Made by a program: the position numbers and the translations under genes | Shown here: positions 35,393-64,000 of the stretch, one piece after another | Layout of the letters: every line of letters begins with the position of its first letter | How positions within the stretch are numbered: position 1 is the stretch's first letter | Assembly: GCF_964194025.1 (NCBI RefSeq) | Contig: NC_134475.1 | Location: forward strand, 21,886,001-21,950,000 | Length of the DNA: 64,000 nucleotides | Source: Convolutriloba macropyga | Taxonomy: Eukaryota | Direction: 5' to 3' | The notes under the pieces: model-generated | Told to the model about the DNA's origin: nothing | Databases searched by the model: none | Seen by the model: only the letters and a program-made list of their open reading frames with translations

Positions 35393-35551
35393 ATTAAAAC
35401 TTGTAGTTCTGTACGGGTTGTTTTTGGCGGAGACTGCAATTGAGAAAATAACAAACAATGCCCACTTTGCGGCACCATATTTTAAAGAACTTTGTCACAT
35501 ACTCCTCTCTCGCCCAACCAAATAATTTCACACATTTTGCTTAGAATTGTG

Positions 35552-35651
35552 AGTAGTAAGTAAATACTGTCTCAAGAGAGGGGGGGGGGGGTTATCCTAC
35601 GATACTTAAACATGGGATAATAGGGGGTTATCCTAGACGGAAAGAGATTAA
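35552..35651 (+). repeat. Left terminal inverted repeat of the Polinton
   Basis: agtagtaagtaaatactgtctcaagagag(G)nttatcctacgatacttaaacatgggataatagggggttatcctagacggaaagagattaa. Confidence 0.95.
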
Positions 35652-35726
35652 GGGGATTAGGCGGCCTTGAAACTCATTTTTCCGCCATGACAACCCTAGC
35701 GACGGTTGATTTGAAAGCTATTCACA

Positions 35727-36104
35727 ATGGAAATTTACAAGGAATCGAAAAAAGATTATTTTCAATACGGTGAAAGGTTTCTTTATTTCTTGGCAACATG
35801 TCAGTACTTGGATCCTGATCTTGATTTGGATATTGCGATGAAAATGAGACCCTATGGTGGACTGATTGGTATTGATAATTCGTCTCTGTACAAGTATTTC
35901 AAGTCTTACAAAATTTTGAGTTTGCATGCTACACTTCACGACGCTTCAGGTTTTGTCTTTGAATATAGTGAAAAAGGGCCGGGCTATTCGTATGTCCTAC
36001 TGTGTCCAGTGACAAACGAGTATCTTGGTCACGTGACAGGACTTGCCTTCTGTCTATATGTAAAGACTTTTAAAAGCAATTTATTCAGTTTGCTGGAATG
36101 TTGA
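35727..36104 (+). CDS. Polinton accessory protein with an HxxxHD motif (possibly PLA2-like)
   Basis: Intact 125-aa ORF, the first gene after the TIR; LHATLHDASG, GPGYSY, LGHVTG. The function is inferred only. Confidence 0.5.
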   Translation: MEIYKESKKDYFQYGERFLYFLATCQYLDPDLDLDIAMKMRPYGGLIGIDNSSLYKYFKSYKILSLHATLHDASGFVFEYSEKGPGYSYVLLCPVTNEYLGHVTGLAFCLYVKTFKSNLFSLLEC

Positions 36105-36589
36105 AATCAAGACCAGTTGTTCTTGATTTTGAAGGCTTTCGACATAAAAAGTCTGGTTTTATTATCAAAGAACTAGCTGTTTGGACAGAAAATTATTGCG
36201 ATACTTTGTCTTTTTTACCCCCAACTTCATTCAACAAACTGTCTTCGAGTGAGAGACGATCATACAGTTGGGTGTCAAAATATCTCCATGGTTTGAATTG
36301 GGAGAGTGGAGATTATCCACATTGTTATTTGCAACAAATTTTTGATAGCATAGCACTCCGATTTCCCTTGGCAACTTTTTATGCAAAGGGAACAGAAAAA
36401 ACAGAAATTATTCAGAAACTTCTCAAAAAGGACGTTATCAATTTAGAGACTTTATTATGTCCAAAAATTGAAAATTTGAAATTTTTTCACGAGACACCAA
36501 TTTGTACTTTACATGTTTTAAGCTGTCCTAAGCGGCAAAGAAATCAACAATGTGCAAGAAAAAAAGCTACCTTTTTTACTTGTGGCTAA
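36098..36589 (+). CDS. DEDD/DnaQ-like 3'-5' exonuclease-fold accessory protein (3' end probably frameshifted)
   Basis: VVLDFEGF...FIIKELA (ExoI DxE), HGLNWESGD, YAKGTEK, INLE and C-terminal CxxH...CA; a pattern seen in Polinton accessory nucleases. Confidence 0.75.
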   Translation: MLKSRPVVLDFEGFRHKKSGFIIKELAVWTENYCDTLSFLPPTSFNKLSSSERRSYSWVSKYLHGLNWESGDYPHCYLQQIFDSIALRFPLATFYAKGTEKTEIIQKLLKKDVINLETLLCPKIENLKFFHETPICTLHVLSCPKRQRNQQCARKKATFFTCG

Positions 36590-36592
36590 CGA

Positions 36593-36922
36593 ATGAATCG
36601 ACGGTCCGAGAAAGCAGCATCGTCTCTACTTCAATTGAACTTGTCCCCAAATTTAGTGGTTTAGAGTTGTATAGCGGATGGAAATCATTTAACAGCTACA
36701 TTTGTCAAAGAGGAAAAAGTTGACAGTCGTGGTCAAACTGTACTGAGGAAACAGCAAATTGTCTGTACTGGAGCTGAAATAGAAGCCTTCAAGAAATACT
36801 TTTCACTTTTGGAGTACTTTCAATTGTACCATGTCTTTGGAAGAGAAAATGCGAAAGCTGAAACTAACCCCTTTACCTATGCCCAAGCGTGCAGAACCAG
36901 TTCTGATGTCACTGAACGATAA
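36593..36922 (+). pseudogene. Hypothetical ~109-aa Polinton protein with one internal stop (absent from the ORF track)
   Basis: MNRRSEKAASSLLQLNLSPNLVV*SCIADGNHLTATFVKEEKVDSRGQTVLRKQQIVCTGAEIEAFKKYF...TER*. It fills the gap between neighbouring genes. Confidence 0.5.
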
Positions 36923-37085
36923 GAGCCTTCCAGCTGAAATAAGACGAAGAATTGAAAAGAACAACGTACAGTCAATTGTTTTCAGAGAAAAAACTGACAG
37001 AGTAAATGCGAACTACACCATTACTTTTATCAATGATAATCAAAACTCACAATTTGTATCTTATGAAATTTATATAATGAAATAA
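36831..37085 (+). CDS. Hypothetical Polinton protein, 84 aa
   Basis: ATG-initiated ORF in good context (accATG) within the tightly packed co-directional gene block. Confidence 0.5.
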   Translation: MSLEEKMRKLKLTPLPMPKRAEPVLMSLNDKSLPAEIRRRIEKNNVQSIVFREKTDRVNANYTITFINDNQNSQFVSYEIYIMK

Positions 37086-37122
37086 CCAAATTTACCTCTT
37101 TTTTCAGAAAACTTATTTTAAA

Positions 37123-37398
37123 ATGAGTAAAGCAGAGGATCAGTTAGAAACAGGCGGGGCAATAACTGACTTAGTGTTTGATGATAATCACCATGAAAGA
37201 CGATCATGGAGGTTTTGTAATTCAAGGATACCACGATCAGAAGTTGTTTATTTTACACAAGTTTTTATTATAATTTTTCTCATAATAGTTTATTTGGTAA
37301 AACTTGTGTTTTTCCAGCTTGAATGTGAAGAGTCTACATTTTGGTTTTCTCTTCTTTCTTGTACAGTTGGATACGCTCTTCCCAACTCAAAATTATGA
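37123..37398 (+). CDS. Small two-TM membrane protein typical of Polintons/adintoviruses
   Basis: RSEVVYFTQVFIIIFLIIVYLVKL and FWFSLLSCTVGYALPN hydrophobic segments; lies directly upstream of the ATPase. Confidence 0.75.
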   Translation: MSKAEDQLETGGAITDLVFDDNHHERRSWRFCNSRIPRSEVVYFTQVFIIIFLIIVYLVKLVFFQLECEESTFWFSLLSCTVGYALPNSKL

Positions 37399-38126
37399 AT
37401 AAAATCATTTCAACAACTGACCGGTTGTTTATGGCCGTTTGCGGTCCGTCATGTTGTGGAAAAACAGAGCTCATTTTCAGAATGTTACTCGACAACACTT
37501 TTTCTCCAAAGTTCCTCTCGATTTTTTATTTCTACCAACATGAACAACCCAAATTTAAGTCACTAGAGGCAAAATTAAACATACAGTTTACCAAATTTTC
37601 AAGCTTCGATTTGATATCGGAGCTCGAAAACTGTCTGTTGGTGTTTGACGGTTCATGTGAAGAGATTTTTAATGACAAAGAGTTTTCGAAATTGGCTACA
37701 GCAGGACGTCACAAAAACATTAGTGTAATTTACGTAAAACACAATTTATTTCAACAAAGTAAATGGTCACGAACTATTGATCTTAATACAACACACATCA
37801 TTTTATTTAAATCACAACGTGACATTCAACAGATTGGTTTAATTAGTCGACAGCTTAATAACACGCAATTTTTGAAAGATAGCTACGAGCTAGCAACCAA
37901 ACAACCCTTTGGTCATTTACTGATCGATCTGGATCCAAAAACATCGGACGTTTTGCGTTACTGCTCCAATATTGTTCCACCAGGACCATCCGTTTTTTAC
38001 CCTCCCCCAGCTAAAGCTGTTATAACCAATTTGAGTAATGAGAGAGAAAGAGCTTTGTATGCTGCGGCGAATGTTAGAGACATCGGACATAAAGTCAAAA
38101 GAACTAATCAAGTCGGTACCAAATAG
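37395..38126 (+). CDS. A32/FtsK-like DNA packaging ATPase
   Basis: Walker A GPSCCGKT, Walker B LLVFDG (DD changed to DG), AGRHKNISVIYVKHNLF, RTIDLNTTHIILFK, PFGHLLIDL. The ATG at 37395 overlaps the upstream stop (ATGA). Confidence 0.93.
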   Translation: MNKIISTTDRLFMAVCGPSCCGKTELIFRMLLDNTFSPKFLSIFYFYQHEQPKFKSLEAKLNIQFTKFSSFDLISELENCLLVFDGSCEEIFNDKEFSKLATAGRHKNISVIYVKHNLFQQSKWSRTIDLNTTHIILFKSQRDIQQIGLISRQLNNTQFLKDSYELATKQPFGHLLIDLDPKTSDVLRYCSNIVPPGPSVFYPPPAKAVITNLSNERERALYAAANVRDIGHKVKRTNQVGTK

Positions 38127-38322
38127 TTTTATTAACTTTCTTTGCGAGTGTTTGCTTAATGTTGTCAACGGTAACGTTCCCGTCAAGAAAACATTAATAC
38201 AAGGTCATGAAAATTCATTTAAAAAACTTTTATCTAAACAAACAAGTTTAAAAAAAGGCAGATTTTTGCTAAAAACACGGTTCTTTTGAAAGGTATTGCT
38301 CTCTCGTGTTACCTTCATCTGA
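38038..38322 (+). pseudogene. Conserved small basic Polinton protein (FLCECLLNVVNGNVP), frameshifted near the 3' end
   Basis: CECxLNxxxGNVP motif followed by a basic helix, recurrent in Polintons downstream of the ATPase. Confidence 0.65.
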
Positions 38323-38332
38323 GGAAGTGATA

Positions 38333-39138
38333 ATGTATACTGAAGAATTTATCTTAATTCCCAAAAGAATGTTCATGTCAACACAACCGGCAAAAAGTGA
38401 AATTTTTGACAATCCTGTCTACAAACAGAAAGCGACCCAATTGTCTCTCATTCAAAGAAACATAATACAAAATCCGGAAAAAAGTGAAAAAGAGGATGGA
38501 GCAGTCCAGACAGAACCCAGCATAAATGTTGAAACAGATCATGAGGAAAAAGAGGAGCCGATGAGAGATGACAGTAAATTGAACCTATTGTCAAAAAAAG
38601 TACAACTACAACGTTTCAGTCATTAATGAGAGATTTGGGAGTGATGGAGAAAAATAAAATCGGAAGAGCAGAAATCATTCTCAACAAGATATTACAATCC
38701 CCGACAATATCCATTGAAGATTCAGGTGGTATCATTCATATTGATAACCAACCACTTGGCTTAAAAGCGTCAACTTTTTTGTATAACACACAGCAGTCAA
38801 CAAAGAAAATTGACATTCAAAAATATTCTCGAGCATTATTAGCTCTCGATCTTCCACCTCATTTAGTTTCGAATACCTATGCCAACCAGATCTTGGAACC
38901 ATCCGAAAGCGAAGAAGAAATTTTTGCAAGACCACGAGGACAATCAGGAAGCGGTTATCAAGTTACCAACCAAAGAAAAACGGGCACAAGAAAAAAGACG
39001 GCAGAAGGAGAGACCAAACAGCAAAAATGGTCTTACTTCTTCCGAGAAAAAAACGTTGGACCAACTGTATTTGAAGGGACCTGCATCGTTTGGAAACCCA
39101 AAGCGATTAAAAACCCAAAGCAAATTATCATTTGGTAA
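38333..39138 (+). pseudogene. Polinton hypothetical protein upstream of the integrase (split into two ORFs)
   Basis: MYTEEFILIPK... (38333-38626) and ...RAEIILNKILQSPTISI...IHIDNQP... (38626-39138); probably one frameshifted gene. Confidence 0.55.
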
Positions 39139-39921
39139 AGTTAAGACATACTTGGAAACCAAGTCATCTTTTACAAAATATCGCCCAATTCGTTTACGAT
39201 TTCCCAGACTTAAAGTAATAGTAAAAGACATAAATGAAATTTGGTCCGTTGACTTGGCTTATGTGGATAAACTAGCAAAATACAACAGAAATGTTAAACA
39301 TTTATTGGTTGCGGTCGACTGTCTTTCCAGATACCTTCGTGTGGAGCCCTTAAAAACAAAGTATGCAACGGAAACTGCCTCGGCCTTGAAAAAAATGATA
39401 AAAAACAAGCAACCACAAAAGTGTGGGTTGATTATGGTACAGAGTTTCTTGGAGTCTTCAAAACCTTATGCAACAAACGAAAAATTCATTTATACAGCAC
39501 TTTTAGTGAAAAAAAGTCTGCATTCGCAGACAAGTACCTTGAAGAAAAGTGGACATACTGCTACATTGATAAACTGGATCAATTTGTGAAAACAATTAAC
39601 TCACGGGTCAACCGCGTAACCAAACTTGCTCCAAATAGGGTCACTAAAAAGGATGTTCCACGACTTGTCTCTTTGAGCGCTCAACTAATCAAGTTTCAGA
39701 GACCCAAATTTTACGTTGGAGATTTTGTTAGAATTGTCAAAGAGGACGAAGCCTTCAGGAAAGGGTATAAACAATCTTTCACCGACGAAGTATTTGAAGT
39801 AGAAAGCTTAGCAGCCTTTATTCCACCAACGTATTCACTTATTGATGCAAACGGTGACAAAATTGAAGGCAAATTTTATCAACCAGAGTTACAACTTGTT
39901 CGTATTGAGAAAAATGAGTGA
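39020..39921 (+). pseudogene. Retroviral-type (RVE) integrase, frameshifted, catalytic Glu segment apparently deleted
   Basis: LYLKGPASFG, EIWSVDLA, LLVAVDCLSRY, (W)VDYGTEF, EKKSAFA[missing ER...]KYLE, INSRVNRVTKLAP, FYVGDFVRI, FRKGY, GKFYQPELQ. Start approximate. No C-terminal chromodomain. Confidence 0.92.
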
Positions 39922-40801
39922 AAACCGTTTCACCGATGAATTCACTGTGCAAGTTATTTCATCTGCTTCAATGGAAATTTTTGACTCTAACACTCTTAGT
40001 TCATTTCAAAATTATTTCAATGATGAAATTCAACTCGCTGGTGACTGGAGAGTAGCTCTCAGTTAGATCATTTTCCCCACAAAAAATGAGCTTATTGTAA
40101 ATGGAGACATGGTAGTATATAGCTTAAAAGGGTACGAAGACATCCAGAAAAGGGCTACAGAAGCCAATGTGATCTCTCGTCCTTATAACGTTGAAAAATT
40201 GTCTATCATGACAGGAACTTATAACTCAGTTGTTGACATACTAACTACTATCAAACGAACTGTTGGACTACCAAACTTTGCATTCAGAGAGATCAAGAAA
40301 ACTGGAAAGTTTGAAATATTGATGGGGAAAAATGAAGGAATTACTTTTCCCAGTAAAGAAATTCCGAGCATTATCGGTTTTTCGGGCATTCCAGATGGCA
40401 GTGGAGTACACATAGGGTACAAAATGAAAAGCGCAACATCAAACAGACTAATGAAGAGTGATGAAACGGCAGCATACTATGGAGATTTTCCCGTTGATCT
40501 TTGCTCAGGAAAGCACTTAATTTTTATATATACGAATACTATTGTATACCAGTACGTCGGTGATACAAAAGACCCCTTGCTTCGAGTCATTGATTCAAAA
40601 CAACGTTTGAAAAACGGTAGTGTCTGGGAGCTTGAACCAACTCATCGAATTGTTTTTTCCAATTTAGATTACAAAAAACTCTTATCAAACACCATACAAT
40701 CAATATCGATTGAGCTTCGCACAGAAACGGGAGAATTGGTTCCCTTTTCGGGAACCGGTAAAGTCATTTTAACCCTTCAGTTCAAAAAATTTTCCAATTA
40801 G
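39914..40801 (+). pseudogene. Minor capsid protein (penton, single jelly-roll) with one internal TAG
   Basis: FTVQVISSASMEIFDSNTLSSFQN...WRVALS*IIFP continuing in frame to IFIYTNTI..QYVGDTKDPLLRVI...ISIELRTETGELVPF...LTLQFKK. Confidence 0.88.
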
Positions 40802-40802
40802 C

Positions 40803-41230
40803 ATGGACTCTTATTACGCTAACCAAGCAACATCCTTACCACATTTCTCTGGCTACTACAGGCAAAAAGGCAGTGGTTTTGGTGCATTAGCTGCGGGAAT
40901 TGAGCGGGTCGCTTTACCCTTAGCTCGACGTTTCATTCTTCCTACTGCAAAACGTATTGGAAAAGAACTTTTAAAGCAAAGTGTTCCAGAGCTGCTAGAC
41001 GTTGTCAGCAGTAAAAAATTACCCAAACAAGCACTCAAAAATACAATAAGCAACACTGTTAAAAAACAAACAGGGGAGCAAGATTTCGGCAACAAAGAAA
41101 AACGATTAGGAGTCGCTCAAAAAAATCACCAAGAAAAACATTAACCAAACAAAAGATGGTCATTTCAAAACAAAAAGTTCCAAAAAGAAGTCGGTCTGAT
41201 TTCTTTTCTCAAGTTAAATATGACCGCTAA
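40803..41230 (+). pseudogene. Basic core (pVII-like) protein with adenain-type cleavage sites, frameshifted
   Basis: RQKGSGFG and KQTG(G) glycine motifs. An Arg/Lys-rich tail (RSRSKKSPRK...KRSRSDFFSQV) continues in the shifted frame. Confidence 0.75.
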
Positions 41231-42498
41231 CCTCTTACCAAACGAAGCAACCCATAGCTCTTTGGATCTGTTTGAGAAGCCGGCGCTCTTGGTGACTTTC
41301 GATGGAAGTGTTTGTCAAAAATTGGGACCTGTTTATAGTCCTGATGGACCCATGTTAGAGTTCGAGGTAACTGGTGACCGTAACAACTTTATTGATTTAC
41401 AAAAAATTTGTTTAGAAGTCAAATGCAAAATTGTTCAGTCTTAGGGAGCTGATCTCAAATATGACGGGGCAGCTACTGCTGACACTGCTAAAACCGATGC
41501 TCCATACTTTTGCAATAATGTGCTACATTCCCTTTTCTCTGACTGCACAGTGTCAGCCAACGGGTTGAAAATCTCTAACGCAAATGGAAATTACGCACAC
41601 AAGAGTTTTATAGAAACTGAGTTCTCACGTAACAAAGACGCAAAGAAACTTGGTTGGCATGTCAAGGCTATTCTTACGAAGAAGATCCATCTGCAATAAA
41701 AGCAGGTGAAATTGCTCGAAGAAAAAACTCAGTCAGAGAGTTAGCAGAATGCACTTTTAAACATCTGCTCAGTGGTGTAACTCTTCGTATTGCATTCAGA
41801 AGATCTATTGTTGATTTTGTTATCATTTCGGATGATGCTGCAAAACATTACAAGGTGAAAATTGTTGAAGCTAATTTGTACGTTCGCAAGATGACATTGA
41901 ATGACGAGGTCGTGTCTGCCATTGAAAAAACCTTGCTTACTAGCCTTGCTGCCTATCCCTACTTTGAAACTTTGACAAAGACGTTTTTGGCTTCAACTGG
42001 TCTGCATAGTTGGAAGCAGGAGGACATTTTTGCACGAGAGCCAATCCGAAGACTAGCAATCTGTCTCAATACGAATGAAGCTTTTTTGGGCAACAATATG
42101 CAAAATCCTTTTCATTTTCAAAAATTTGACTCGGAACAGATATATATTTATCGCAACGCAATGGGTTACCAGTGGCTGATAGCCCAATATCTACAAATGA
42201 TAACAAACGCCTTTATTTTAATACAATATCCGATTTAGCCTATATTGATAATGGGCATGGAGTAAGTCTGTCAGACTATCCCAACCATTTTATAATGGTA
42301 TTTGATCTGACTAGCGCCCAACAAGCTTCTCATGATTTTACACACCCGGGGCTAACAAACTGTTCCATATCTATCGAATTGAAGTTTTCAGCAGCGTTAC
42401 AGACCAACATTGAAATTTTTATTATTGGAGAAAAAGCTAGTACAATTTTTGTTGATACTGCGCGACGAGTGTCAAAAAAACATATTCTAACAAACTGA
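41220..42498 (+). pseudogene. Major capsid protein (double jelly-roll, hexon-like), with stop, frameshifts and a deletion
   Basis: SSLDLFEKP, PMLEFEVTG..NFIDL, NNVLHSLFS, YAHKSFIET, LLSGVTLRI, ANLYVRK, NPFHFQKF, VFDLT, ISIELKF. Confidence 0.92.
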
Positions 42499-42926
42499 TG
42501 ATGGACGAAGATGATATTAATGGTTTAATTCAGAGATGTCAAAAACTAAAGCACAAATTTCGAGATGTATTTGCAGCAGACAATTTTCCTTCAAAATTGA
42601 AATCGAACACTTTTTTAATAGTAAACGCGTCAAAATCTCAAAGTCCTGGCATGCACTGGCTCCTCATATGTAAAAAGAACGACCATCTTCTGTTTGCTGA
42701 TCCCCTTGGACGATCCTTGCCTTCTTACAAGAATATCTATCAACGACTTGCAAAAAACAATGTACAGTTTCAACAATTACTTGAAAACCAACCAATTCAA
42801 GGTCAAAACTCAGAATTGTGTGGACTCTTTTGTATTTTTATTGCTCATTTAATATTTGATGATAGACAAATTGTAAATTGTAGTGATTTTCAATTGATTC
42901 GCTTTGCTCTTCACATGATGCTCTAA
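42498..42926 (+). CDS. Adenain-like cysteine maturation protease
   Basis: GMHW (His), FADPLG (Asp), IQGQNSELCGLFC (Gln/Cys). ORF intact; AATAAA at ~42944. Confidence 0.93.
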   Translation: MMDEDDINGLIQRCQKLKHKFRDVFAADNFPSKLKSNTFLIVNASKSQSPGMHWLLICKKNDHLLFADPLGRSLPSYKNIYQRLAKNNVQFQQLLENQPIQGQNSELCGLFCIFIAHLIFDDRQIVNCSDFQLIRFALHMML

Positions 42927-42977
42927 CAAAACTAATATTGTGAAATAAATTTTTTTTAAAAACTGAATTTTTTCTTC

Positions 42978-43673
42978 TTATACAAGACGAAAAAATAGTA
43001 AATCAGAATCAATGTTTAGTTTTCCAAAACCGCTCATAAACATATCCATAATCTGACAAAAAGCACTAGAGTGAGGACCACTCAAAATTGATTCCACTCT
43101 TTTTAAAGTTTCACTACTAATTTGATAAGTTTGAGTTTTCGAATAAATTGTAGAACACACAAAATTGTGAATTGTTTTCTGTGGTACAATTGATGTAGAT
43201 CTCGCCAATGTTTTTGAGATTCCGCTAGTGACCGCTGTAGATTTTGATAGTTTGGTTGCCGCTGTTGTCAAGGGTGGAAGTCGCTTGCGTACATTTGCTG
43301 TATCCATTTTCTCTCCAGATTTGTTATTAAAGTCGACGGCAAGCTGTAATTTTGAAAATGTATCTCCTTTAAATTCCAGACTCGTTGAGGTTGAAAATAA
43401 GCGTCTGAAGGTAGTGAAGAGACAGGGAACTGCAAAAATTTTGATTGGCTTCATGGTCTCAACATCGATTGCACTCTCAATCAGAACGTGAAAATGGTTA
43501 GTTGGTAACTGACAAAATTCAGACTCAAAATGAGGACACACAGCATAGTTATTCGAAGCTGTTAAGTTTGGCTTTTCATCAGCAATTAAAAACTTGAACT
43601 GCTTTTGAAATTGTTTGAAATAGTTGGGAGAGCGCTCAAACATTGCTTCCACCATCTCTACTACACTGATCAA
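42978..43673 (-). CDS. Hypothetical Polinton protein (231 aa), convergent with adenain
   Basis: Long open ORF containing CPH..., NHFHVLI and NVRKRLPP; no firm family assignment. Confidence 0.6.
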   Translation of the reverse strand: MISVVEMVEAMFERSPNYFKQFQKQFKFLIADEKPNLTASNNYAVCPHFESEFCQLPTNHFHVLIESAIDVETMKPIKIFAVPCLFTTFRRLFSTSTSLEFKGDTFSKLQLAVDFNNKSGEKMDTANVRKRLPPLTTAATKLSKSTAVTSGISKTLARSTSIVPQKTIHNFVCSTIYSKTQTYQISSETLKRVESILSGPHSSAFCQIMDMFMSGFGKLNIDSDLLFFRLV

Positions 43674-43953
43674 ATTTCTGCTTCTTTGCTGAGGGTGGTT
43701 TTGAATCTTGCGTTGCAGCAGCTTTACGTATTTATTCTGCTTTTTTGACTAAATTTCCAAACTCTTCTAGAGTTAGAGAAATTCTCTGTTCAAACTCGTA
43801 ATCATCGGCCGCTTTCTTGAACAACTTTAGAAACACATATGTTCCGGTTCTTTCGTAAGTTTTTAAAGTTGCCCTGACCAAACGCTTTTCAGTTTGGGAA
43901 ATGTCGAAATAGCAATCTCCAAACTGTGTGTCTTTTGAGGAAGTAAAAGGCAT
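43636..43953 (-). pseudogene. PC4/whirly-like ssDNA-binding protein with one premature stop
   Basis: RLVRATLKTYERTGTYVFLKLFKK...RISLTLEEFGNL resembles the PC4 fold motif. Reading through the TAA at 43732-43734 gives IRKAAATQDSKPPSAKKQKF...* with an NLS-like motif. Confidence 0.6.
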
Positions 43954-44141
43954 GGTAGGCAACTTGTTTTATCACTTGCTCTTAATGTAAATAACTACGA
44001 AGTTAGGAGGCGCGGCAAGTTGGGATTAAACCAGTGTCGTCATATTTTTAATTAAATCCAAGTGATTGGTAAATACAATCTCAAGTACGCCCCACAACGT
44101 ACTTGAGACTGTTCATTTTAGACTTTTATACGTATGTGACC

Positions 44142-44998
44142 TTAGATAAAAGTTAATTAAAACCATACCTTTATAAACCACCAGAACCTACTTGCGAACA
44201 GAGATAACAAGTACATGTGTTTTGTATATAAAGCAATAAATTTATCAACACATCCCCACACTTCTGTGTTGGAGAGAGTTAAACATTAATAGTGTAGGGA
44301 CCCATGTATTTTACAGATTTAGAACAGATGTGACCCTATATAGTATAGTGTAGAGACCACACAAAATTTACATAAAACCAAAACAAAACAGATGTGACCC
44401 CAAATTCCTCTGTAAAGGAACCACCGTGCGGCTAACCACATGCTATAAACAAAGAGCTGTGTTATGCAAGTAGGCGTGACGGAAAGGTATGCTGCAATCT
44501 TTTGTTTGGTCTTACATAAGGCGACCCTTGTGAAACACATGTTGGGAAAGAATTTTGTACTTGTGTTCATTTTTAGATAATAGTTAATAAAGACCATACC
44601 TCTATAAACCACCAGAACCTACTTGCGAACAAAGATAACCAGTACATGTGTTTTGTATATAAAGCAATAAATTTATCAGCACAACCCACACTTCTGTGTG
44701 GGAGAAAGTTAACCATTAATAGTGTAGGGACCCATGTATTTTACATACAAGTTGATTTAGAACAGATGTGACCCTAGATAGTATCGTGCAGAGACCACAC
44801 ACAATTTACATAAAACCAATACAAAACAGATGTGACCCCAAATTACTCTGTAAAGGAACCACAGTGTGGCTAACCACAAGTTATATACAATATATCATGC
44901 AACTAGGTGTGATTATGCTCCAATCATTTGTTTGGTCTTAGATAAGGCGAACCTTGCGAAACACATGTTGGGAAAAAATTTTGTACTTGTGTTCATTT
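44142..44998. repeat. Two diverged tandem copies of a ~430-bp non-coding unit inside the Polinton
   Basis: tataaaccaccagaacctacttgcgaac at ~44172 and ~44603. Both copies end in aattttgtacttgtgttcattt, and each contains aacagatgtgaccc twice. Confidence 0.9.
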
Positions 44999-45055
44999 CT
45001 TTCTTTTGCTCTTACTTAACAGTTAACTATTGAATCGAACTTGAACTTCAAAACA

Positions 45056-45770
45056 ATGTCCGTGAAAATTCTTTCGGAGTCTGCTATCTCTTTTGAGAGA
45101 ACTCTTGTTTACCAAACCGTGTTTGAAAATTTTGTCGTTCTGATACAACAGAAAAGAAAAAAACGATTTGTGGTACATTTACCAGCATTGTTTGATACCG
45201 AAGCTATTTATTAACGCTATTGCTGCCCTACCGGAAAATTCGGAGCCGGCTGAATCCAGTATCATTACTTCTGGAGGACACTTACCACCAAAAACTATAC
45301 CACAAATGCATTCGACTGAAGAAACTTTGCCGGAGGAAGTGAGACGTCTCTTGTACAGATACGACTGCGATTGTGTGCCCTTATTCGAGAATCAACTCGG
45401 TACATATCAAGCCTACGAAAATTTGGGTGATATGTGGGGTGTCAAATCATCACCATCCTCACCGGACAGTCAGCCACCGAGTGTTTCAGTCAGTGTTCCA
45501 ACAACTCCTGCTGTGGATCCAAGCCCAACTTTTACTCCAACCCCAAGTCCGTCACTCTTTGAGGATTTCCAGAGGAAGAACAAGATCTCTGACAATTTTG
45601 CAAGTCAGTTTGATGTCAACATTTTATCTGGTTCAAACTTTCATACACTACAACCCCGAACAAATTCAGCCGATTTCAAAACACCCAATTGCTCGGAAAC
45701 TCCAGTAGTGTGCGCAGCACCGAAAAAACGAAGACAAGAAGACTCTCTAATGGACTTTTTTGACCTCTAA
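45056..45770 (+). pseudogene. S/P/T-rich Polinton accessory protein with C-terminal NLS and PIP-box-like motif (frameshift in the A-run near 45155)
   Basis: MSVKILSESAISFERTLVY... from ATG 45056 joins the 45168-45770 frame, which ends PKKRRQEDSLMDFFDL*. AATAAA at ~45912. Confidence 0.6.
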
Positions 45771-47872
45771 CGACTTATTTAATATTGAATTGCTTTTCCT
45801 TTGCACTTTGGTGTGTTGTGTTACTGGCTTTTCTGAATAGCTCTCTAATTGACACTCGTCTTTTAATCTTTTTTACATAGCTAGCAGACTTTAGAATCAG
45901 AATTTTACAAAAATAAACATGTTCAAACACGTTCACAAAAATAGTATCGTTTAGTTAGACAAAGTTGGGGGAAAATTTCCAAAATGGACATGTTCAAACG
46001 TGTTCGAATATATAGCAGGAAGCAAACAAGCTTCTGATTGGTTGAGAGAAAATTTGTTGAGAAAGCTATTGAAATGTAAAAATAGGTTTGAACAAAAGCT
46101 TCAAAAAATGCATAAAGTCCTTATCAAACAAAAACTTCATTTAGCAAATCGTTCTTCGTATGCTGATATAATATCAGCGCTCCTGTTGGGTATACCTTCA
46201 GGTGTTAGTTAAACTAGTAAAACATCATTTTTTCAGCAAAAAAGGAGGAAAAAAAGCGATTTTTCCGGTTTTTTTGCTTTATAAATTTTTTTTGACGGAA
46301 CGAAAACTCAAAACCTGAAGGCCATCACCAACTGTTTTTTGTGGGCTACCGATATGAATAAAAAAATTGACCACATTTCTTATAAAAAAGTTGAAAAAAA
46401 ACGAAAAATTTTTTTTTGTTTTTCATGGTGACTTTTGACCCCAGAAAAGTCGGCTCCAACAGATAGTTGGGATGAAACTGACTATTGGGTTGACACTATC
46501 AGACACTGTACTACAAAAAAGCTCATAACGCTCGTCAAAATAAACTCAATCCTTCATCAGATAATTAACCATTAATTAACAGCTAATTAGCAGCTAATTA
46601 GTCTAATTAGTGATTAACAAAAAAAATTCCCATTATTTTAAACGGATTTGTAATCATTGGTACATGCTTGTCACTTTTGGTCATAAGGGTCAGGGTCGAA
46701 AAACGGCTCCTTCACCGATTTTCAAAACATCTGGACATTAACGTCTCATTAACATCTGGCATTAATTAGCAATTGAAGTACCCGAAATAATAATGATACA
46801 CCAGGTTTTTTCCAAAAAACCGATTTTTTGGGGGCTGGAGACAAAATCATCTCATAACAGCTGTCATCGAAAAATGCTTGCAACAGGGGGCTTGTCATTG
46901 GCTGTCATGTGATGACATTGATTGATCATGATTGACAGAAAATCTAACTTTTTTCCTGATAAAGATGAGGGATTTTTTCTTGTCGGGTCCTACATTTTAG
47001 TGCCCGGGGAGCATTTTTGGTTATGATGACCAACATCGTCCGACGCACCCATCGGCATCTACAGTAAAAAAAACTACAAAAATCGCTTTTTTTTGCAACA
47101 TTAAGCGAAAAAAACTGAACATTTCATTTGCTTTTAGTAGATTTTTTAGCTGTTCAAACACCGTGACAGTAATAAAACTGTGCATGATAACCGTCCAAAG
47201 CATCCCTTGTACTTAAAATTTAACAAAGTGTACAAAAAAGCGATGTTTTTGCAATATTATTCAAAAATTCTATAGAAATCAAATCAAAACTTTCTTTTTA
47301 TGTAGGCTACTAGTGTGTAATATTACATCTAACGGGTTCAAACACAAATGTTTCCTCTACCCTTATGTCATTGGAGCATATTATCTATGAAAATTAAGAA
47401 AAAAGATTAAAATATTTGATTGAAAGATCATTAAAAATTCATAAAAGTTTACTTTGACTAAACCTAAAAGTTAGCAAATCAAAAAAATTGCAATTGATAA
47501 GCATTGTTACCTCACATATAACTAATAACTAAAAGGAACTACCCCTGGTTTTAAAAAAACCTTTTTATATACTGTACTATTAATTCGAAAATAACAAACA
47601 AGTTTTGTCATGTCAGTGTTGTTCAGTGAGAAATGTAAAGTCAAGCACTGTTTTACGTTCAACGCAACTTGATATGTTCATAGTAGTTGACTAAAGCGGG
47701 GACGCGCTCCTATTATCCAATCAAATTCGAAAATTTTGAAAGTTTTTGAATTACGCGCGTCTTATATGAACCTCGTGTGGAATAGAAATAAATTCGCCAT
47801 TTGAAGTTGAGTTACATGTTTACGAAAGTTGTCATTATCTCTGTTAACTTTTGAATCTTGAATTTTTCGACT

Positions 47873-50800
47873 ATGGTTTTCAATTGCAAATATTGTTCGG
47901 CAACTTTTGCAAACAGAGGAAATCAATCTCGCCATGAGCATCGCTACCATCCCGACGAAGTAGGTTTACCAGTCTTTACCTGTTGTATTTGTACATTCAC
48001 TTGTAGAAAACTTTCTGAACTGGAACAACACATGAGGACTTGTCATCAAAAATTTACAAATTGTTGTCGGTTCTGCTATATGGGTTTTAACAACACCAGA
48101 TTATTTGCTCAGCATATGAGTTCTTTGCATTCTTTACCTGTCTTTGGCGATCAATTCCAACCAACTCAAGCGCCGGCCGAAACTGCCTTTAATGGTACCC
48201 TTCAGAGCTACCATCTGCCGCCATCACCAACCCAAGCCAACACAATCCTTGCTCAGTTCATGTTCCAGCATAAACCACAAATCAATTCGCTTATAGAACA
48301 AAAACTCTCACAAGGATCACAAAAAGTTCAATTTAGTGCTCATCTTCAACTCCGAAAGCCAAGTCAAAACGAAGATCAGGAAGATGAGCTTATTGAAATT
48401 TATGCAAATTCGCTCATGACACCGGTGTATAGTCAGGGAATTAGCAGTGAGACCTTCTGGACTATGGTCGAGAAGATGATGATAGTGCTAACGACATTTG
48501 CCTCTAATGGTAGTGGTTAGGTGCTTGAGAAAGTTATCAAAATAATTGTGAACTTTGCCCGTTACCGACCTATAACCGGCTCGTCTTACATTGCAATACC
48601 ATCAAAATTACAAAATTGCCGCAGTTTACTTAATATTCGTAACCATGAGGACGCAAATTGCTTCCTTTACTGCTATGTTGCTGCATATCATATGCACAAC
48701 AATATTAGCTTAGATCGACCAGGAAGGAACTACAACACAGACAAAACTTCACCCGAAACTTACAAGCAAGCCAACCTTCATCAACCAACTGGACACTTCG
48801 ATATGCCCATGGGGCTAGAAGACATCAATCAGTTCGAAAATCTAAATGAAGTTCGAATCAACGTTTTTGGTTATGATGGTAGAGACTTATTTCCACTCAG
48901 AGTCTCAAACTTCACAATGGACCTATTGCTTTTATACGAAGCAGACTGTTACCATTATGTGTTGATTACCAACTTGGTTAAGGTAGTCTGTCAACTCCGA
49001 AATACCAAATTTTGCTTTACGTTTCATATTTGCCGGAAATGTTTCTGGTTGTGTGAAGAAGGCCTTGCAAAGCTTACCGCACATATGGAAACCTACTGTG
49101 AAAATGCGCCGGCTGTTTTCGATTACCAGCTCCGGGAAAAATATTTATATAAATTGAAAAACTTAGCCGCTACCTGGTTTGTTCCATTAGTCATTTACTT
49201 TGACTTCGAATCCTTCTTGTGTCCAGTAGCAGGATGCACGCTCCACGGGAACAACTCATACACCAGAGTTATTGAAAAACACGAGCCCTGTGGGTTTTCA
49301 CTTGCGGTAATTGATCACTACTCAACAAAACCCATCTTCTTCCACGTGGACAGCTCTGAAGACTGCATTACTAAATTTGTAAACATGTTACACACACTAG
49401 CCAAGGATATATACAAGCGCAATTGAGCTTTTCCTTTCTTCAGAGGTGACCGTAGCCAGTATCCGAAAAGTGCAGCTAGCGAATGTTGGATATGCAACGA
49501 AGCCTTTGACGATAATGATGAACAATCATCAATTGATCTGGATCACTGCCACTACAGCGGACAATTTCTTGGCTGGGCTCATGAAAAATGCAATCGAGCA
49601 CGAAGGAACGTCAACTTTACCCCTGTGGTGGGTCATAAAATACAAAATTATGATCTTCATCACATTTGTTTAGCCCTCCAATCTTGTGAGCCAACGACCA
49701 CTGTAAGTGTAATTCCATCTAGTGATGAAAAATACATTTCCATGAATTTTGGAGTACTCGTGAAGACCATAACCCTAGATGATGGAAAAGTGATCAAAAA
49801 GTACGAAAATCTGAGGTTCATTGATTCATTCAAGATGATAAATTCGTCTCTCGAAAAGTTGGTTGACATTTTACCAAGAGATCGTTTTGGAATGCTTGCT
49901 TCTGTCTTTCCTAACCTATCCTCAACAGAATTGAAGCTCCTGCAGCAAAAAGGATATTACCTCTATTCATATGTTAGCGGTCGAGAAAAGTTCAGCGAAA
50001 AATCCTTACCGCCTCTTAATGAATGACGTAACACTTTAGAAAAAAACGCAGTAACAATAACTCAAGAAAACTTGAACCACGCCAAGACGATGTGGAACAC
50101 TCTGAATTGCCAAACTCTACAAGACTACCACGATGCATACCTGAAAACCGATTGCGCTCTTCTCGCATGCGTTTGTGAATTCCACAGAGAGCTCAGTTTC
50201 TCCACCTACAAACTCGATTGCATGCACTTTTACACACTGCCAAATATGGCTAAGGAAGCATCCTTGAGAATATGCAAGGCGGAGGTCGAATTGCTTACAG
50301 AACGCGAGCACCTCGATATGATAGAAGGAGCAGTACGTGCGGGAGTATGCTCAGTCTACGAGATGAGAAAGTTTAGAGCAAATAACAAATATTTACCAGA
50401 TTACGACTCTTCATAACCCTCGACATTTGGCTTCTGCGTGGACGCCAATAACCTATACGGTGGCGTCATGCAAAATGAAAAACCCCTCAGTCAGATTTTA
50501 CGCTGAACTCTGATATTACACTGGCTGAGATACTAAACTGTCCTGATAATAACCCTGTCGGTTACTTCGTGGAAGTCGACTTGCATTATCCAGCAAGTCT
50601 ACACGATTACCATCAGGACTTCCCCCTCGCACCATCGAAAAATATTGTTGAGGATGACTGGCTCAGTGACTACCAAGTGAATTTGCGAGAGAGTCATAAC
50701 TTACCCCCCTCAAAAGTTCCAAAACTGTTGCAGACTTTCTTCGACAAAGAACATTATGTGCTGCATTACAAGCTGTTGAAACTGTATGTTAACTTGGGAT

Positions 50801-52137
50801 TAGTAGTGAGGAAAATGCATCGTTATATACGTTAACACCCTATATAACCCTGAACAGTGAGAAGAGACAAGCGGCTTCGAATAAATTTGAGGAGAGTTTC
50901 TATAAACTAATGAACAACGCCGTTTATGGGAAAAACTGCGAATCGAAACGTCGACGGATGAAAATCGAGCTTACTAGAGACGCAAGACGAACCCTAAATT
51001 TAGTAAGCAAGTTTGAGTTTGATACATTCAAAGTGTTTGGCGAGAACATGGCAGCTCTCTCCTCCCGCCCAAAAAAGATCTATTGGGATACACCAACTAT
51101 TGTATTGGCCACAATACTTGATCTATCGAAATACTACATGTATCAGTTTCACTATGGAACAATGCGATCTTCATTTGAATGTCGATTACTTTATAGTGAT
51201 ACTGATAGCTTGCTATACCGGATCAATTGTGAAGATCTCTACCGTGAACTGAAGGAGAGCAATGTTCTTGATCAATTCGACTTCTCAAATTACCCAGAAG
51301 ATCACGAACTGTACAGCGAAGAAAATAAGCGCGTCGTCTTAAAATTCAAAGATGAATTTGCTGGGGATTATATAAAAGAGTTTATATGCCTGAAGCCAAA
51401 GCTGTACAGCATTACTTCCACTAGTGAGTATTTTACGTTTAATGATTCAAGAAAAAACTAACAAAGTACCAACTAACCTTGTATGATTGTCATAATTTGA
51501 CTGCTTTTTGCTGTTCACAGGTAACCGAAAAAAGACCGCCAAAGGAATAACAAGAGCAGCCCAAAATTTGCTTCGACATGCTGACTACAATAATACACTT
51601 GTGACTGGTAGTACACTGCGCGCTGAAAACACAAGGATTGTTTCGGAAAAGCATGTTCTACAAACGGTTTCAACGAATAAAATATGTCTCTCTGCTTTTG
51701 ATAATAAACGCCACATTTTGAACGAGGGAATTAAAACACTACCATTCGGCCACTATAAAATTGATCATTGCCGAGTCGAAGATTTTTCTTGGGATAGCGA
51801 TGAAGTAGAGTGGGACTACGAAAATGTAGAAAATTATGCTCACCTTCTCCTAGATTCGAGTCCAAACTGGGAGCATAATAATAGTTTTGTTGTACCGGAT
51901 ACAACAATAATTGAAAGCCCGGAAGAATGGGAAACACCTGACCCGGGATTTGCAATGACAAGTATTATTAACGAGGACGATATTGATAGCGATGATATCG
52001 TAGATTTCGATGCTACCACCAGCTCCAGCTCTTCCTCCCCTAACCCATTCATTAATTATGAAGCTAATGAGTGCAGTGAAAGTAGTACTAGCGATTATGA
52101 AGAAGAACCAGCATTTAAAGTTGCACGCAGACAATAA
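47873..52137 (+). pseudogene. Protein-primed family B DNA polymerase (pPolB) with three N-terminal C2H2 zinc fingers, an Endonuclease VII-like insert, one intron and an acidic tail; multiple stops and frameshifts
   Basis: CKYC..HEHRYH, CCIC..HMRTCH, CRFC..HMSSLH; GSSYI, INVFGY, VIYFDFES (ExoI), CWIC..DHCHYSG..AHEKCN, H(K)IQNYDLH, RFIDSF, YLKTD, DANNLYG, KLMNNAVYGK, YSDTDS, KFKDE, LKPKLYS, TAKGI. Confidence 0.96.
51424..51520 (+). other. Predicted 97-nt phase-1 spliceosomal intron in pPolB
   Basis: GTGAGT donor, two ACTAAC branch-like motifs, pyrimidine tract and TTCACAG acceptor. Removal restores LKPKLYSITSTSNRKKTAKGI in frame. Confidence 0.88.
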
Positions 52138-52336
52138 ACTTATTGTACTTAACTCCGTAAATTGCGCCTTTTGAATTCCTAACCGGGTAAATTTTGTGTT
52201 TATGAGTGCTAAAATACGTTTCAATAAATTGTTCACTTGCAGCTCTTATCGGAACGAAATTTAGAACAAAGTTGGCTGTTTGACCGAAAACAAGTTTGCC
52301 GCTTTGGAAATAGTCACATCTGGTAAAGAATGAAAG

Positions 52337-52431
52337 TTAATCCCTTTCCGTCTAGGATAACCCCCTATTATCCCATGTTTAAGTATCGTAGGATAACCCC
52401 CCCTCTCTTGAGACAGTATTTACTTACTACT
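52337..52431 (-). repeat. Right terminal inverted repeat of the Polinton
   Basis: Reverse complement matches the left TIR except for poly-G length and one substitution. Confidence 0.95.
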
Positions 52432-52478
52432 ATTGTGTTTTTGGGACCACTACTTAGGTTATGCTTTGAATACCTTAC

Positions 52479-63974: not shown

Positions 63975-63985
63975 ATAGACTCTAA

Positions 63986-64000
63986 TCTCTCTCTCTCTCT
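63986..64000. repeat. (TC)n microsatellite running off the window end
   Basis: tctctctctctctct. Confidence 0.8.

What the first reader, a model, noticed from the sequence alone, without database searches (positions are those of the whole stretch)
35546..52478. Complete adintovirus-like Polinton inserted 47 bp from a splice donor in an ion-channel gene
Seen: TIRs, AGTAGT ends and the ATTGTG TSD define a 16,880-bp element with the full virion and replication gene set. Its right end (52431) is 47 bp into the intron that starts at donor 52478 of the minus-strand Cys-loop gene, and it enlarges that intron from ~2.8 to ~19.7 kb. Most viral genes are antisense to the host gene, whose four visible exons remain open. 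Inference: the insertion is tolerated but could alter splicing, cause early polyadenylation (dropping M4) or spread silencing. The ~100-bp TIRs are at the short end for Polintons.
Basis: partly seen in the sequence, partly recalled or inferred. Interest (0 to 1): 0.7.

Follow-up and report, generated by a model that had tools for sequence, protein, structure and literature searches.

The report
Broken Polinton in an acoel intron
A full-length but mutationally dead copy of a virus-like Polinton (Maverick) transposon sits in an intron of an ion-channel-type gene of the acoel worm Convolutriloba macropyga; it is present on only one of two assembled versions of the locus, which makes it a well-documented but ordinary transposon insertion.

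Summary
The element is 35552-52431 (16,880 bp). It has ~100-bp terminal inverted repeats, AGTAGT ends and an ATTGTG target-site duplication. A second public contig carries the empty site, with both flanks joined over a single ATTGTG.

The window comes from the Convolutriloba macropyga (acoel) primary assembly. RefSeq protein XP_075251562.1 maps at 100% to four minus-strand exons and uses exactly the predicted 52479->32827 junction. It matches Pfam Neur_chan_memb above threshold. The intron is 19,651 bp, or 2,765 bp without the insertion.

All six Polinton hallmark genes are present:
- Double jelly-roll capsid and penton, by fold search.
- A32-type ATPase, adenain-like protease, rve integrase and protein-primed PolB, by Pfam and siblings.

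"Complete" applies to length and gene set only. Polymerase, capsid, penton and integrase carry 12 stops or frameshifts between them. ATPase and protease are open.

The family has hundreds of copies in this genome, and some have uninterrupted hallmark genes.

The proposed effects on splicing, polyadenylation or silencing remain untested. The annotated host product has only the transmembrane region.

This is a new member of a known kind, of modest interest.

The parts
35546..35551 (.). Left copy of the 6-bp target-site duplication, ATTGTG
   Evidence: The empty-site contig has one copy.
35552..52431 (+). Whole Polinton/Maverick element, 16,880 bp
   Evidence: TIRs, TSD, empty site. Sibling copies end at the same bases.
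35552..35653 (.). Left terminal inverted repeat, about 100 bp, with a G-run of 12
35727..36104 (+). ORF of unknown function, 125 aa (137 aa in siblings), uninterrupted
   Evidence: No Pfam match.
36098..36669 (+). Gene of unknown function (195 aa in siblings). Status uncertain: it looks interrupted, but the only reference is 51% identical.
36831..37085 (+). Small ORF, 84 aa, conserved in siblings, uninterrupted
37123..37398 (+). Small ORF, 91 aa, predicted hydrophobic segment, conserved in siblings, uninterrupted
37395..38126 (+). A32/FtsK-type genome-packaging ATPase, 243 aa, uninterrupted
   Evidence: Pox_A32 E=9e-4 for the window copy. The 96%-identical sibling P0001 scores 23.3 bits against a cut-off of 22.8. 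774 homologues.
38333..39042 (+). Gene of unknown function upstream of the integrase (194-318 aa in siblings). Broken: 1 frameshift.
39056..39921 (+). rve-family (retrovirus-like) integrase, 294-299 aa in siblings. Broken: 1 frameshift.
   Evidence: rve E=3.7e-5 on a window piece. Sibling P0326 scores 35.8 bits against a cut-off of 32.6. Counts.
39914..40801 (+). Penton (minor capsid) protein, 295 aa in siblings. Broken: 1 in-frame stop.
   Evidence: The model of sibling P0309 has pLDDT 68. Its top fold matches are mavirus, adenovirus and Sputnik pentons, best E=3e-7, with low TM of about 0.3. Counts.
40803..41144 (+). ORF of 113 aa, conserved in siblings, uninterrupted, function unknown
   Evidence: No Pfam match.
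41220..42498 (+). Major capsid protein with a double jelly-roll fold, 436 aa in siblings. Broken: 2 frameshifts and 2 in-frame stops.
   Evidence: The model of sibling P0293 has pLDDT 84. Fold matches are the EhV-201, Sputnik, PBCV-1, iridovirus and mavirus MCPs at E about 1e-15, and Adintovirus/MELD/adomavirus proteins in BFVD. Counts.
42498..42926 (+). Adenain-like cysteine protease, 142 aa, uninterrupted
   Evidence: Peptidase_C5 scores 27.6 bits against a cut-off of 21.3. 96% identical to the sibling over the full length.
42960..43953 (-). Minus-strand gene or genes of unknown function. One sibling has a single 326-aa ORF; other siblings and this copy have it split. One stop against each of two sibling references.
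44142..44998 (.). Internal tandem duplication, two units of about 430 bp at 92-95% identity, in the non-coding centre. Siblings vary here.
45056..45770 (+). Gene of unknown function with a Ser/Pro-rich middle, 237 aa in siblings. Broken: 1 frameshift.
47873..51461 (+). [quoted passage not shown] Broken: 4 in-frame stops and 2 frameshifts.
   Evidence: The window aligns to residues 1-1206 of P0623 at 94% and to distant full-length relatives. P0623 and P0125 match PF03175 above the cut-off. A YSDTDS motif is visible.
51535..52137 (+). ORF downstream of the polymerase, 201 aa in the sibling, acidic and Ser-rich tail, uninterrupted, function unknown
52335..52431 (.). Right terminal inverted repeat, with a G-run of 7
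   Evidence: Identical to the left TIR of sibling L002 over 95 bp.
52432..52437 (.). Right copy of the target-site duplication, ATTGTG
32828..52478 (-). Host intron 3, 19,651 bp, which holds the element. It runs from GT at 52478 to AG at 32828.
32327..32827 (-). Host exon 4: end of the M3-M4 loop, M4 and the stop codon
   Evidence: P0618 residues 186-351 match at 100%. Neur_chan_memb profile positions 165-232.
52479..52753 (-). Host exon 3: M3 and the start of the cytoplasmic loop
   Evidence: P0618 residues 94-186. Splice sites read.
53096..53227 (-). Host exon 2: end of M1, then M2
   Evidence: P0618 residues 50-94. Splice sites. Weak Neur_chan_memb match.
62536..62683 (-). Host exon 1 of the RefSeq model (pre-M1 and M1), lying next to the assembly gap 62746-62945
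   Evidence: P0618 residues 1-49 match at 100%. N run.

Best explanation
The element is one copy of a high-copy Polinton/Maverick family (animal 'adintovirus-like' type) in the acoel Convolutriloba macropyga.

How it got there (inferred from the family's known biology). An rve integrase joined the linear, TIR-ended element into ATTGTG, 41 nt downstream of a splice donor, and duplicated the 6-bp target. The site lies in intron 3 of a gene that encodes a Cys-loop-type channel transmembrane region.

What the sequence shows.
- The copy is full length and has every hallmark gene.
- It cannot make its own polymerase, capsid, penton or integrase, because these carry 12 stops or frameshifts between them.
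- It is therefore a dead passenger that lengthens the intron sevenfold.
- It is present on one assembled haplotype and absent, with an intact target site, on another. The insertion is thus younger than the split of those haplotypes and is not fixed.

Inferred, not shown.
- The host transcript is spliced across the element, as the RefSeq model assumes.
- The antisense, broken viral genes are not expressed to any effect.
- Either the copy decayed in place, or it was already defective and was moved by proteins from intact siblings.
For: Boundaries and empty site.

Source and host gene. P0618 (XP_075251562.1, C. macropyga) maps at 100%. The locus is OZ077306.1 of GCA_964194025.3. Neur_chan_memb scores 47.2 bits against a cut-off of 28.1.

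Hallmark genes.
- Protease above the Pfam cut-off in the window itself.
- ATPase, integrase and PolB above the cut-off in siblings that are 83-96% identical at protein level.
- Capsid and penton by fold search.

Break counts against the intact sibling L008.
- PolB: 4 stops and 2 frame changes.
- MCP: 2 stops and 2 frame changes.
- Penton: 1 stop.
- Integrase: 1 frame change.
- Two unknown genes: 1 frame change each.
The same counts hold for the part covered by the second assembly contig L001 (MCP, penton, integrase and the two unknown genes identical; L001 stops inside PolB). L001 is 100% identical to the window over 15,250 bp of the element.

Read quality. The genome is HiFi with QV 53 (PMC13650328), so the breaks are not read errors.

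Family size. The MCP 90% clusters hold 367 and 139 members, and there are 375 MCP clusters in all.

Siblings. Some have uninterrupted PolB of 1206 aa, MCP of 436, penton of 295 and integrase of 299.

Relaxed constraint on this copy. It has 95 private substitutions in 4,511 coding columns, at codon positions 19/34/42. The intact sibling has 57, at 16/7/34.
Against: - The 'empty' contig differs from the window by 4-7% next to the site. An old paralogous locus rather than an allele is therefore not strictly excluded.
- Both ENA contigs probably come from the same reads as the window, so they are independent assemblies, not independent data.
- No expression data were available, so splicing across the element rests on a predicted (XP_) model.
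- The two TIRs differ by only 1 mismatch and one homopolymer length. That is fewer differences than the 2% private divergence of the coding parts would predict if all the decay had happened after insertion. This fits insertion of an already defective copy better than decay in place, but with about 100 bp the test is weak.
Confidence: 0.88

Rival explanations
1. The element is an intact, potentially active endogenous adintovirus, that is, a 'complete' provirus in the functional sense.
For: It has full length, both TIRs, an intact TSD and all hallmark genes. The insertion is not fixed. Siblings have uninterrupted genes.
Against: Four of the six hallmark genes carry 12 stops or frameshifts between them, and at least two further genes are broken. 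The same sequence appears in a second assembly, from HiFi data with QV 53 (PMC13650328).
Confidence: 0.02
2. The junctions are an assembly artefact: a Polinton copy from elsewhere was joined into this intron by mis-assembly of a repeat.
For: The family has hundreds of similar copies. The window is a haplotype mosaic with a phase switch about 1.6 kb from the left end.
Against: - Two assemblers give the same two junctions.
- The flanks carry a perfect 6-bp duplication of a sequence that is single in the empty contig. Mis-assembly would not create this.
- The nearest siblings found are only about 95% identical, which is too different to collapse in HiFi assemblies.
Confidence: 0.03
3. The filled and empty contigs are diverged paralogous loci from a segmental duplication, not alleles. 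The insertion would then be fixed at one paralogue.
For: Divergence next to the site is 4-7%, above the genome-wide 3.65% heterozygosity (PMC13650328). Both contigs have the same nominal depth, 50x and 51x, which alleles and paralogues would both give.
Against: - The primary assembly switches between the two contigs with zero differences to each on either side, as in an allelic bubble.
- Collinearity holds over more than 20 kb on both sides.
- Only one gene of this kind was found in the 90% cluster from the reference genome.
Confidence: 0.12
4. The insertion damages the host gene on the filled haplotype, through premature polyadenylation, exon skipping or silencing.
For: - The insertion is 16.9 kb of AT-rich foreign DNA, 47 nt from a donor.
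- The intron grows from 2.8 to 19.7 kb.
- The insertion is seen only next to an empty copy, so nothing shows that it is tolerated when homozygous.
Against: - The RefSeq model joins the exons across it.
- Donor, acceptor and polypyrimidine tract are untouched.
- The empty haplotype also carries a private 2.95-kb repeat in the same intron, and the window is full of other transposons. Large transposon-laden introns seem normal here.
Confidence: 0.2

Closest known systems
Polintons / Mavericks (polintoviruses; Kapitonov & Jurka 2006, Pritham et al. 2007; capsid genes in Krupovic, Bamford & Koonin 2014, PMC4028283)
   Same: - Size of 16.9 kb, within the published 13-25 kb range.
- TIRs and a 6-bp TSD.
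- Gene set of pPolB, rve integrase, A32/FtsK ATPase, adenain-like protease, double jelly-roll MCP and penton (PMC4028283, PMC10748475).
- Split capsid genes are common in genomic copies (PMC4028283).
   Different: - The TIRs are at the lower limit, about 100 bp.
- The polymerase has N-terminal C2H2 zinc fingers and a weak Endonuclease VII/HNH-like match ahead of the polymerase domain.
- The host is an acoel, for which I found no Polinton description in the held literature.
Adintoviruses (family Adintoviridae; Starrett et al. 2021, PMC8502044)
   Same: - Animal host.
- PolB of the PF03175 ('Alpha') type.
- Adenovirus-like hexon/penton folds, adenain, packaging ATPase and integrase.
- Found both free and endogenised, with ITRs.
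   Different: - The OTU-like N-terminal PolB domain and the accessory genes (PLA2X, GasderminX, Adintoc, oncogene-like) were not detected by Pfam and could not be tested by fold.
- No phylogeny was made.
- This copy is a broken integrant, not a candidate virus genome.
Mavirus and other virophages with rve integrase
   Same: The MCP and penton models match the mavirus structures 6g45 and 6g41. Both have a protease, an ATPase, pPolB and an integrase.
   Different: Virophages infect protists together with giant viruses. Sequence identity is about 10%. This element is a germline multi-copy resident of an animal genome.
Intronic transposon insertion polymorphisms in animals in general
   Same: A large element sits in an intron, mostly antisense to the host gene, with the splice sites intact and a presence/absence difference between haplotypes.
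   Different: Nothing material. This is the ordinary fate of tolerated insertions.

Membership tests
Polinton/Maverick | [quoted passage not shown] | tested here: met
   The window aligns over residues 1-1206 of sibling P0623 at 94%. P0623 and P0125 match PF03175 at 36.9 and 47.2 bits against a cut-off of 25.8. The gene is present but broken.
Polinton/Maverick | Retrovirus-like (rve) integrase | tested here: met
   A window piece matches rve at E=3.7e-5, below the cut-off. Sibling P0326 scores 35.8 bits against 32.6. The gene is present but broken.
Polinton/Maverick | Virion module: double jelly-roll MCP, penton, A32/FtsK ATPase and adenain-like protease | tested here: met
   MCP fold at E about 1e-15. 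The penton fold matches are consistently pentons, but the model confidence is moderate. ATPase. Protease above the cut-off.
Polinton/Maverick | Terminal inverted repeats and a 5-8 bp (typically 6-bp) target-site duplication; length 13-25 kb | tested here: met
   and the empty site. Published ranges from PMC10748475.
Adintoviridae (Starrett et al. 2021) | Animal-associated, with adenovirus-like hexon/penton/adenain plus integrase and PolB | tested here: met
   The host is C. macropyga. Genes as above. BFVD matches include Adintovirus sp. and MELD virus proteins.
Adintoviridae (Starrett et al. 2021) | OTU-like N-terminal domain of PolB | tested here: inconclusive
   There is no OTU Pfam match in P0125 or P0623. 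The paper found the domain by structure prediction.
Adintoviridae (Starrett et al. 2021) | Placement inside the Alpha or Beta clade in a PolB or hexon tree | not tested
   No reference adintovirus sequences were obtained. Only the PF03175 ('Alpha-type') match and distant relatives in a fly and a spider are available.
Cys-loop ligand-gated ion channel (host gene) | Four-helix transmembrane region (Pfam Neur_chan_memb) | tested here: met
   P0618 scores 47.2 bits against a cut-off of 28.1, over profile positions 12-232 of 233.
Cys-loop ligand-gated ion channel (host gene) | Extracellular ligand-binding domain with the Cys-loop | tested here: inconclusive
   It is absent from the RefSeq model. 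No matching motif or ORF was found in 53230-64000 or in the 10 kb upstream. An assembly gap lies directly upstream of exon 1, and exons could lie farther away.

The most novel reading that the evidence does not exclude
The family to which this dead copy belongs may be a currently or very recently active, capsid-forming adintovirus lineage of acoels (Xenacoelomorpha). Three observations point that way. It has hundreds of copies. Many siblings have uninterrupted capsid, penton, integrase and polymerase genes, and their private changes are biased to third codon positions. This insertion is still present/absent within one sequenced animal. If so, this would be a natural virus-transposon system in an early-branching bilaterian that can be kept in culture.
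Probability: 0.4. Interest if true: 0.55.

Novelty: new member of a known kind. Interest (0 to 1): 0.3.

Why it matters
For the window itself it matters little. It is a dead transposon copy in an intron, and the effects on the host gene are conjecture.

Its value is as a clean, fully bounded reference insertion. It has a filled site, an empty site, the TSD and both TIRs. The Polinton family it belongs to is very abundant in Convolutriloba macropyga and has, as far as the held literature shows, not been described for Xenacoelomorpha.

The family could serve to study, by description alone, how such virus-like elements spread and decay in a highly heterozygous, partly asexual animal. The presence/absence state within one specimen also gives a natural allele-specific comparison for testing whether a 17-kb intronic insertion changes expression of its host gene.

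Tried and rejected
- PDB sequence searches with a host exon and with the full-length PolB relative P0125 found nothing.
- Pfam on single host exons gave only sub-threshold, though collinear, Neur_chan_memb matches. This was settled later with the RefSeq protein.
- Motif and ORF scans for ligand-binding or M1 exons in 53230-64000 and in the 10 kb beyond the window found none.
- An exact look-up of the window's own exon-4 ORF found no record. The reason turned out to be the haplotype switch and different gene-call bounds.
- I did not run a Pfam scan of all 124 minus-strand ORFs through one alignment, so as not to send a very long list of references in one call.
- Pfam found nothing for the small or unknown element ORFs.
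- There are no tRNA genes, no Rfam family and no second copy of the element in the window.
- Sequencing error as the cause of the frameshifts was considered and rejected, because the data are HiFi with QV 53 and four of the breaks in the polymerase alone are in-frame stops.
- Somatic or precise excision as the origin of the empty site was rejected. The empty contig is a distinct haplotype, 4-7% different around the site.
- I tried to decide between 'decayed in place' and 'inserted already defective' from TIR divergence and codon-position counts. The result was suggestive only.

An earlier count gave the bounds of one ORF piece of the broken integrase gene, as used for a Pfam query. That comes close to naming a break place. 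I have not repeated it here and have deleted nothing.
Full report
**1. The observation**

The inverted-repeat search finds two adjoining arm pairs, 35552-35586/52397-52431 (100%) and 35585-35651/52337-52403 (99%). Read directly, they form one terminal inverted repeat of about 95-102 bp. It is interrupted only by a G-run of 12 on the left against 7 on the right, plus one mismatch. Both ends begin AGTAGTAAG. ATTGTG lies immediately outside each end, at 35546-35551 and 52432-52437. There is no second copy in the window.

**2. Where the window comes from**

- An exact-protein look-up of one element ORF led to contig ctg36119_50x_l of ENA analysis ERZ25071359.
- The 90% cluster of the host exon-4 ORF contains RefSeq XP_075251562.1 (P0618, 351 aa, 'uncharacterized protein LOC142344007', Convolutriloba macropyga).
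- P0618 maps to the window at 98-100% in four minus-strand blocks.
- Its gene lies on OZ077306.1 of GCA_964194025.3.
- The genome note (PMC13650328) describes one specimen, PacBio HiFi reads, a hifiasm primary assembly, QV 53 and heterozygosity of 3.65%.

The host is thus an acoel (Xenacoelomorpha).

**3. The host gene**

From the sequence and the P0618 mapping, the coding exons are:

| Exon | Coordinates |
|---|---|
| 1 | 62683-62536 |
| 2 | 53227-53096 |
| 3 | 52753-52479 |
| 4 | 32827-32327 (with stop) |

Together they make 1,056 nt, which is 351 codons plus the stop. All introns have GT...AG.

P0618 matches Pfam Neur_chan_memb at 47.2 bits against a cut-off of 28.1, over almost the whole profile.

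The intron is 32828-52478, 19,651 bp. Without the element and one TSD copy it is 2,765 bp. From the first intron base (52478) to the last base before the element (52432) there are 47 nt.

One caveat applies. The model has only the transmembrane region. I found no ligand-binding or Cys-loop exons in the rest of the window or in the 10 kb upstream. The assembly gap 62746-62945 sits just upstream of exon 1. Whether this is a whole receptor gene is open.

**4. The empty site**

The same cluster held a 104-aa ORF (P0619) from another contig of the same ENA analysis, ctg29006_51x_l. Its locus (L007) is collinear with the window on both sides of the element. The alignment jumps from 35551 to 52432 with a 6-base overlap. 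Read directly, the contig has ...CACATTTTTGCTTAGA ATTGTG TTTTTGGGACCACTAC..., which is left flank, one ATTGTG and right flank. It proves the boundaries and the duplication on insertion.

**5. Haplotypes**

- The filled ENA contig (L001) is 100% identical to the window over all 15,250 compared bases of the element, and over the last about 1.5 kb of left flank. It differs at 148 positions in 30.1-33.9 kb.
- The empty contig shows the reverse. It has no differences from 28.5 to about 33.9 kb, then 4% divergence up to the site and about 7% to the right of it.
- The window is therefore a mosaic with a phase switch near 33.9-34.0 kb.
- Exon 4 in the window comes from the empty haplotype. Exon 3 and the element come from the filled one.
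- The filled contig has its own exon 4, with three amino-acid differences, at the same distance from the element.
- The simplest reading is a heterozygous insertion in the sequenced animal. A diverged paralogue cannot be fully excluded with these tools.
- The empty haplotype has a private insertion of about 2.95 kb of another repeat in the same intron. Its intron is about 5.7 kb.

**6. Gene content**

| Gene | Evidence |
|---|---|
| Adenain-like protease | Peptidase_C5 above the cut-off in the window itself |
| Packaging ATPase | Weak Pox_A32 match in the window; above the cut-off in the 96%-identical sibling P0001 |
| Integrase | Weak rve match in the window; above the cut-off in sibling P0326 |
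| Polymerase | Sibling P0623 (1206 aa) and the more distant P0125 match PF03175 above the cut-off; the window aligns to P0623 from residue 1 to 1206; the YSDTDS motif is visible |
| Major capsid protein | An AlphaFold model of the 436-aa sibling (pLDDT 84) matches double jelly-roll capsid proteins of EhV-201, Sputnik, PBCV-1, iridovirus and mavirus at E about 1e-15; in BFVD it matches a bracovirus-borne protein and Adintovirus, MELD-virus and adomavirus proteins |
| Penton | The 295-aa sibling gave a moderate model (pLDDT 68); its best matches are all pentons, from mavirus, adenovirus and Sputnik, with best E=3e-7 and TM only about 0.3 |

So the full virion and replication set is there, and the order is the same as in the siblings.

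**7. State of the genes**

Measured against uninterrupted sibling proteins by tblastn, with counts only:

| Gene | In-frame stops | Frame changes |
|---|---|---|
| Polymerase | 4 | 2 |
| Major capsid | 2 | 2 |
| Penton | 1 | 0 |
| Integrase | 0 | 1 |
| Unknown gene before the integrase | 0 | 1 |
| 237-aa unknown gene | 0 | 1 |

- The minus-strand ORFs are split, as in several siblings.
- One further gene is uncertain.
- Open genes are the ATPase, the protease, the 125-, 84-, 91- and 113-aa ORFs, and the 201-aa ORF after the polymerase.
- For the part covered by the second assembly contig the counts agree (MCP, penton, integrase and the two unknown genes identical; the contig stops inside the polymerase). 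With HiFi reads of QV 53 the breaks are real.

'Complete' is thus true of length and gene set, not of function.

**8. The family**

- The ATPase search returned 774 homologues, nearly all from ENA assemblies.
- The capsid clusters at 90% identity hold 367 and 139 members.
- The nearest named capsid hits are C. macropyga proteins annotated 'F54H12.2-like'.
- The siblings L002 and L008 are about 95% identical in DNA. They end at the same terminal bases as the window copy.
- L008 has uninterrupted integrase, penton, capsid, protease and a 1206-aa polymerase. Other siblings have polymerase calls of 1013-1159 aa.
- Distant polymerase relatives occur in a fly and a spider.

**9. Age and mode**

In 4,511 gap-free coding columns, the window copy has 95 private substitutions (2.1%), at codon positions 19/34/42. 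The intact sibling L008 has 57 (1.3%), at 16/7/34. The window lineage is therefore longer and less constrained.

The two TIRs differ by only one mismatch and one homopolymer length. That is somewhat less than expected if all 2% had accrued after insertion. This leans towards a copy that was already defective when it was inserted with the help of proteins from intact siblings. With 100 bp the test is weak, and decay in place on an old haplotype is equally possible given 4-7% haplotype divergence nearby.

**10. Mechanism**

Shown:
- Integration at ATTGTG with a 6-bp duplication.
- An orientation mostly antisense to the host gene.
- Untouched splice signals.
- Loss of coding capacity.
- A presence/absence difference between assembled haplotypes.

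Inferred from the family's known biology (PMC4028283, PMC10748475, PMC8502044):
- Integration by an rve integrase.
- Replication of the family by protein-primed synthesis.

Not testable here:
- Any effect on splicing, polyadenylation or chromatin.

**11. Comparison and novelty**

Every defining feature of Polintons/Mavericks that I could test is met. For Adintoviridae the general features are met. The OTU-like polymerase domain, the accessory genes and the tree position are untested or inconclusive.

I found no paper in the held library on Polintons in Xenacoelomorpha. The genome note does not mention them in the passages searched.

The finding is a new member of a known kind. The insertion itself is ordinary. 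The abundant family, with open-framed siblings and an insertion polymorphism, is the more interesting part.

I have not repeated such bounds in this report.

Noticed in passing
window 28473-35551, with the switch near 33900-34000: The window is a haplotype mosaic. It is identical to the empty contig ctg29006 left of about 33.9 kb and identical to the filled contig ctg36119 right of about 34.0 kb. Host exon 4 and exon 3 in the window therefore come from different haplotypes.
   Followed up: yes
L007 (reverse-complemented) 6191-9165, inserted at window-equivalent 34672-34676; related to window 53614-57506: The empty haplotype carries its own repeat insertion of about 2.95 kb in the same intron. 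It is 85-88% identical, in inverted orientation, to tandemly arranged repeats in host intron 1 of the window.
   Followed up: partly
window 8683-15465, minus strand: A retrotransposon with long ORFs. These include gag-like ORFs with zinc knuckles (399 aa and 353 aa), a reverse-transcriptase-like ORF (366 aa), and RNase H/integrase-like ORFs (325 aa and 194 aa). The region has a strong GC skew.
   Followed up: no
window 19303-22456, plus strand: An 822-aa ORF with reverse-transcriptase-like motifs is followed by two shorter ORFs. Its 90% cluster has 105 members, including one C. macropyga RefSeq protein, so this is another abundant retroelement.
   Followed up: partly
window 47873-48520 and siblings P0623, P0125: The polymerase of this family starts with C2H2 zinc fingers. 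It also has a weak, sub-threshold Endonuclease VII (HNH-like) match just before the polymerase domain, seen in three relatives.
   Followed up: partly
L009 2500-6700 (about 3-7.5 kb beyond the right end of the window): Remnants of a different, divergent Polinton-like element lie upstream of the host gene. They include ORFs with a DTDS polymerase motif and a Walker-A ATPase motif.
   Followed up: no
L008 17139-23621; L004 1-2277: Sibling loci carry a second, more divergent Polinton (about 66% DNA identity) or an inverted polymerase fragment close by. Copies of the family tend to lie near each other.
   Followed up: no
window 44142-44998: There is a tandem duplication of about 430 bp in the non-coding centre of the element. 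The region varies in length between siblings.
   Followed up: partly
window 62536-62945 and L009 1-10000: The RefSeq host model has only the transmembrane region and begins right beside a 200-N assembly gap. No ligand-binding exons were seen within 10 kb upstream.
   Followed up: partly
window 16492-17058 and 34896-34996: Two tandem repeat arrays: one of 174-bp units (3.3 copies) and one of 32-bp units (3.1 copies).
   Followed up: no
BFVD match R9XLG5: The best viral-structure match of the capsid model is an uncharacterised protein recorded under Cotesia sesamiae Mombasa bracovirus (22% identity). It is presumably a Maverick gene carried in that wasp-virus record.
   Followed up: no
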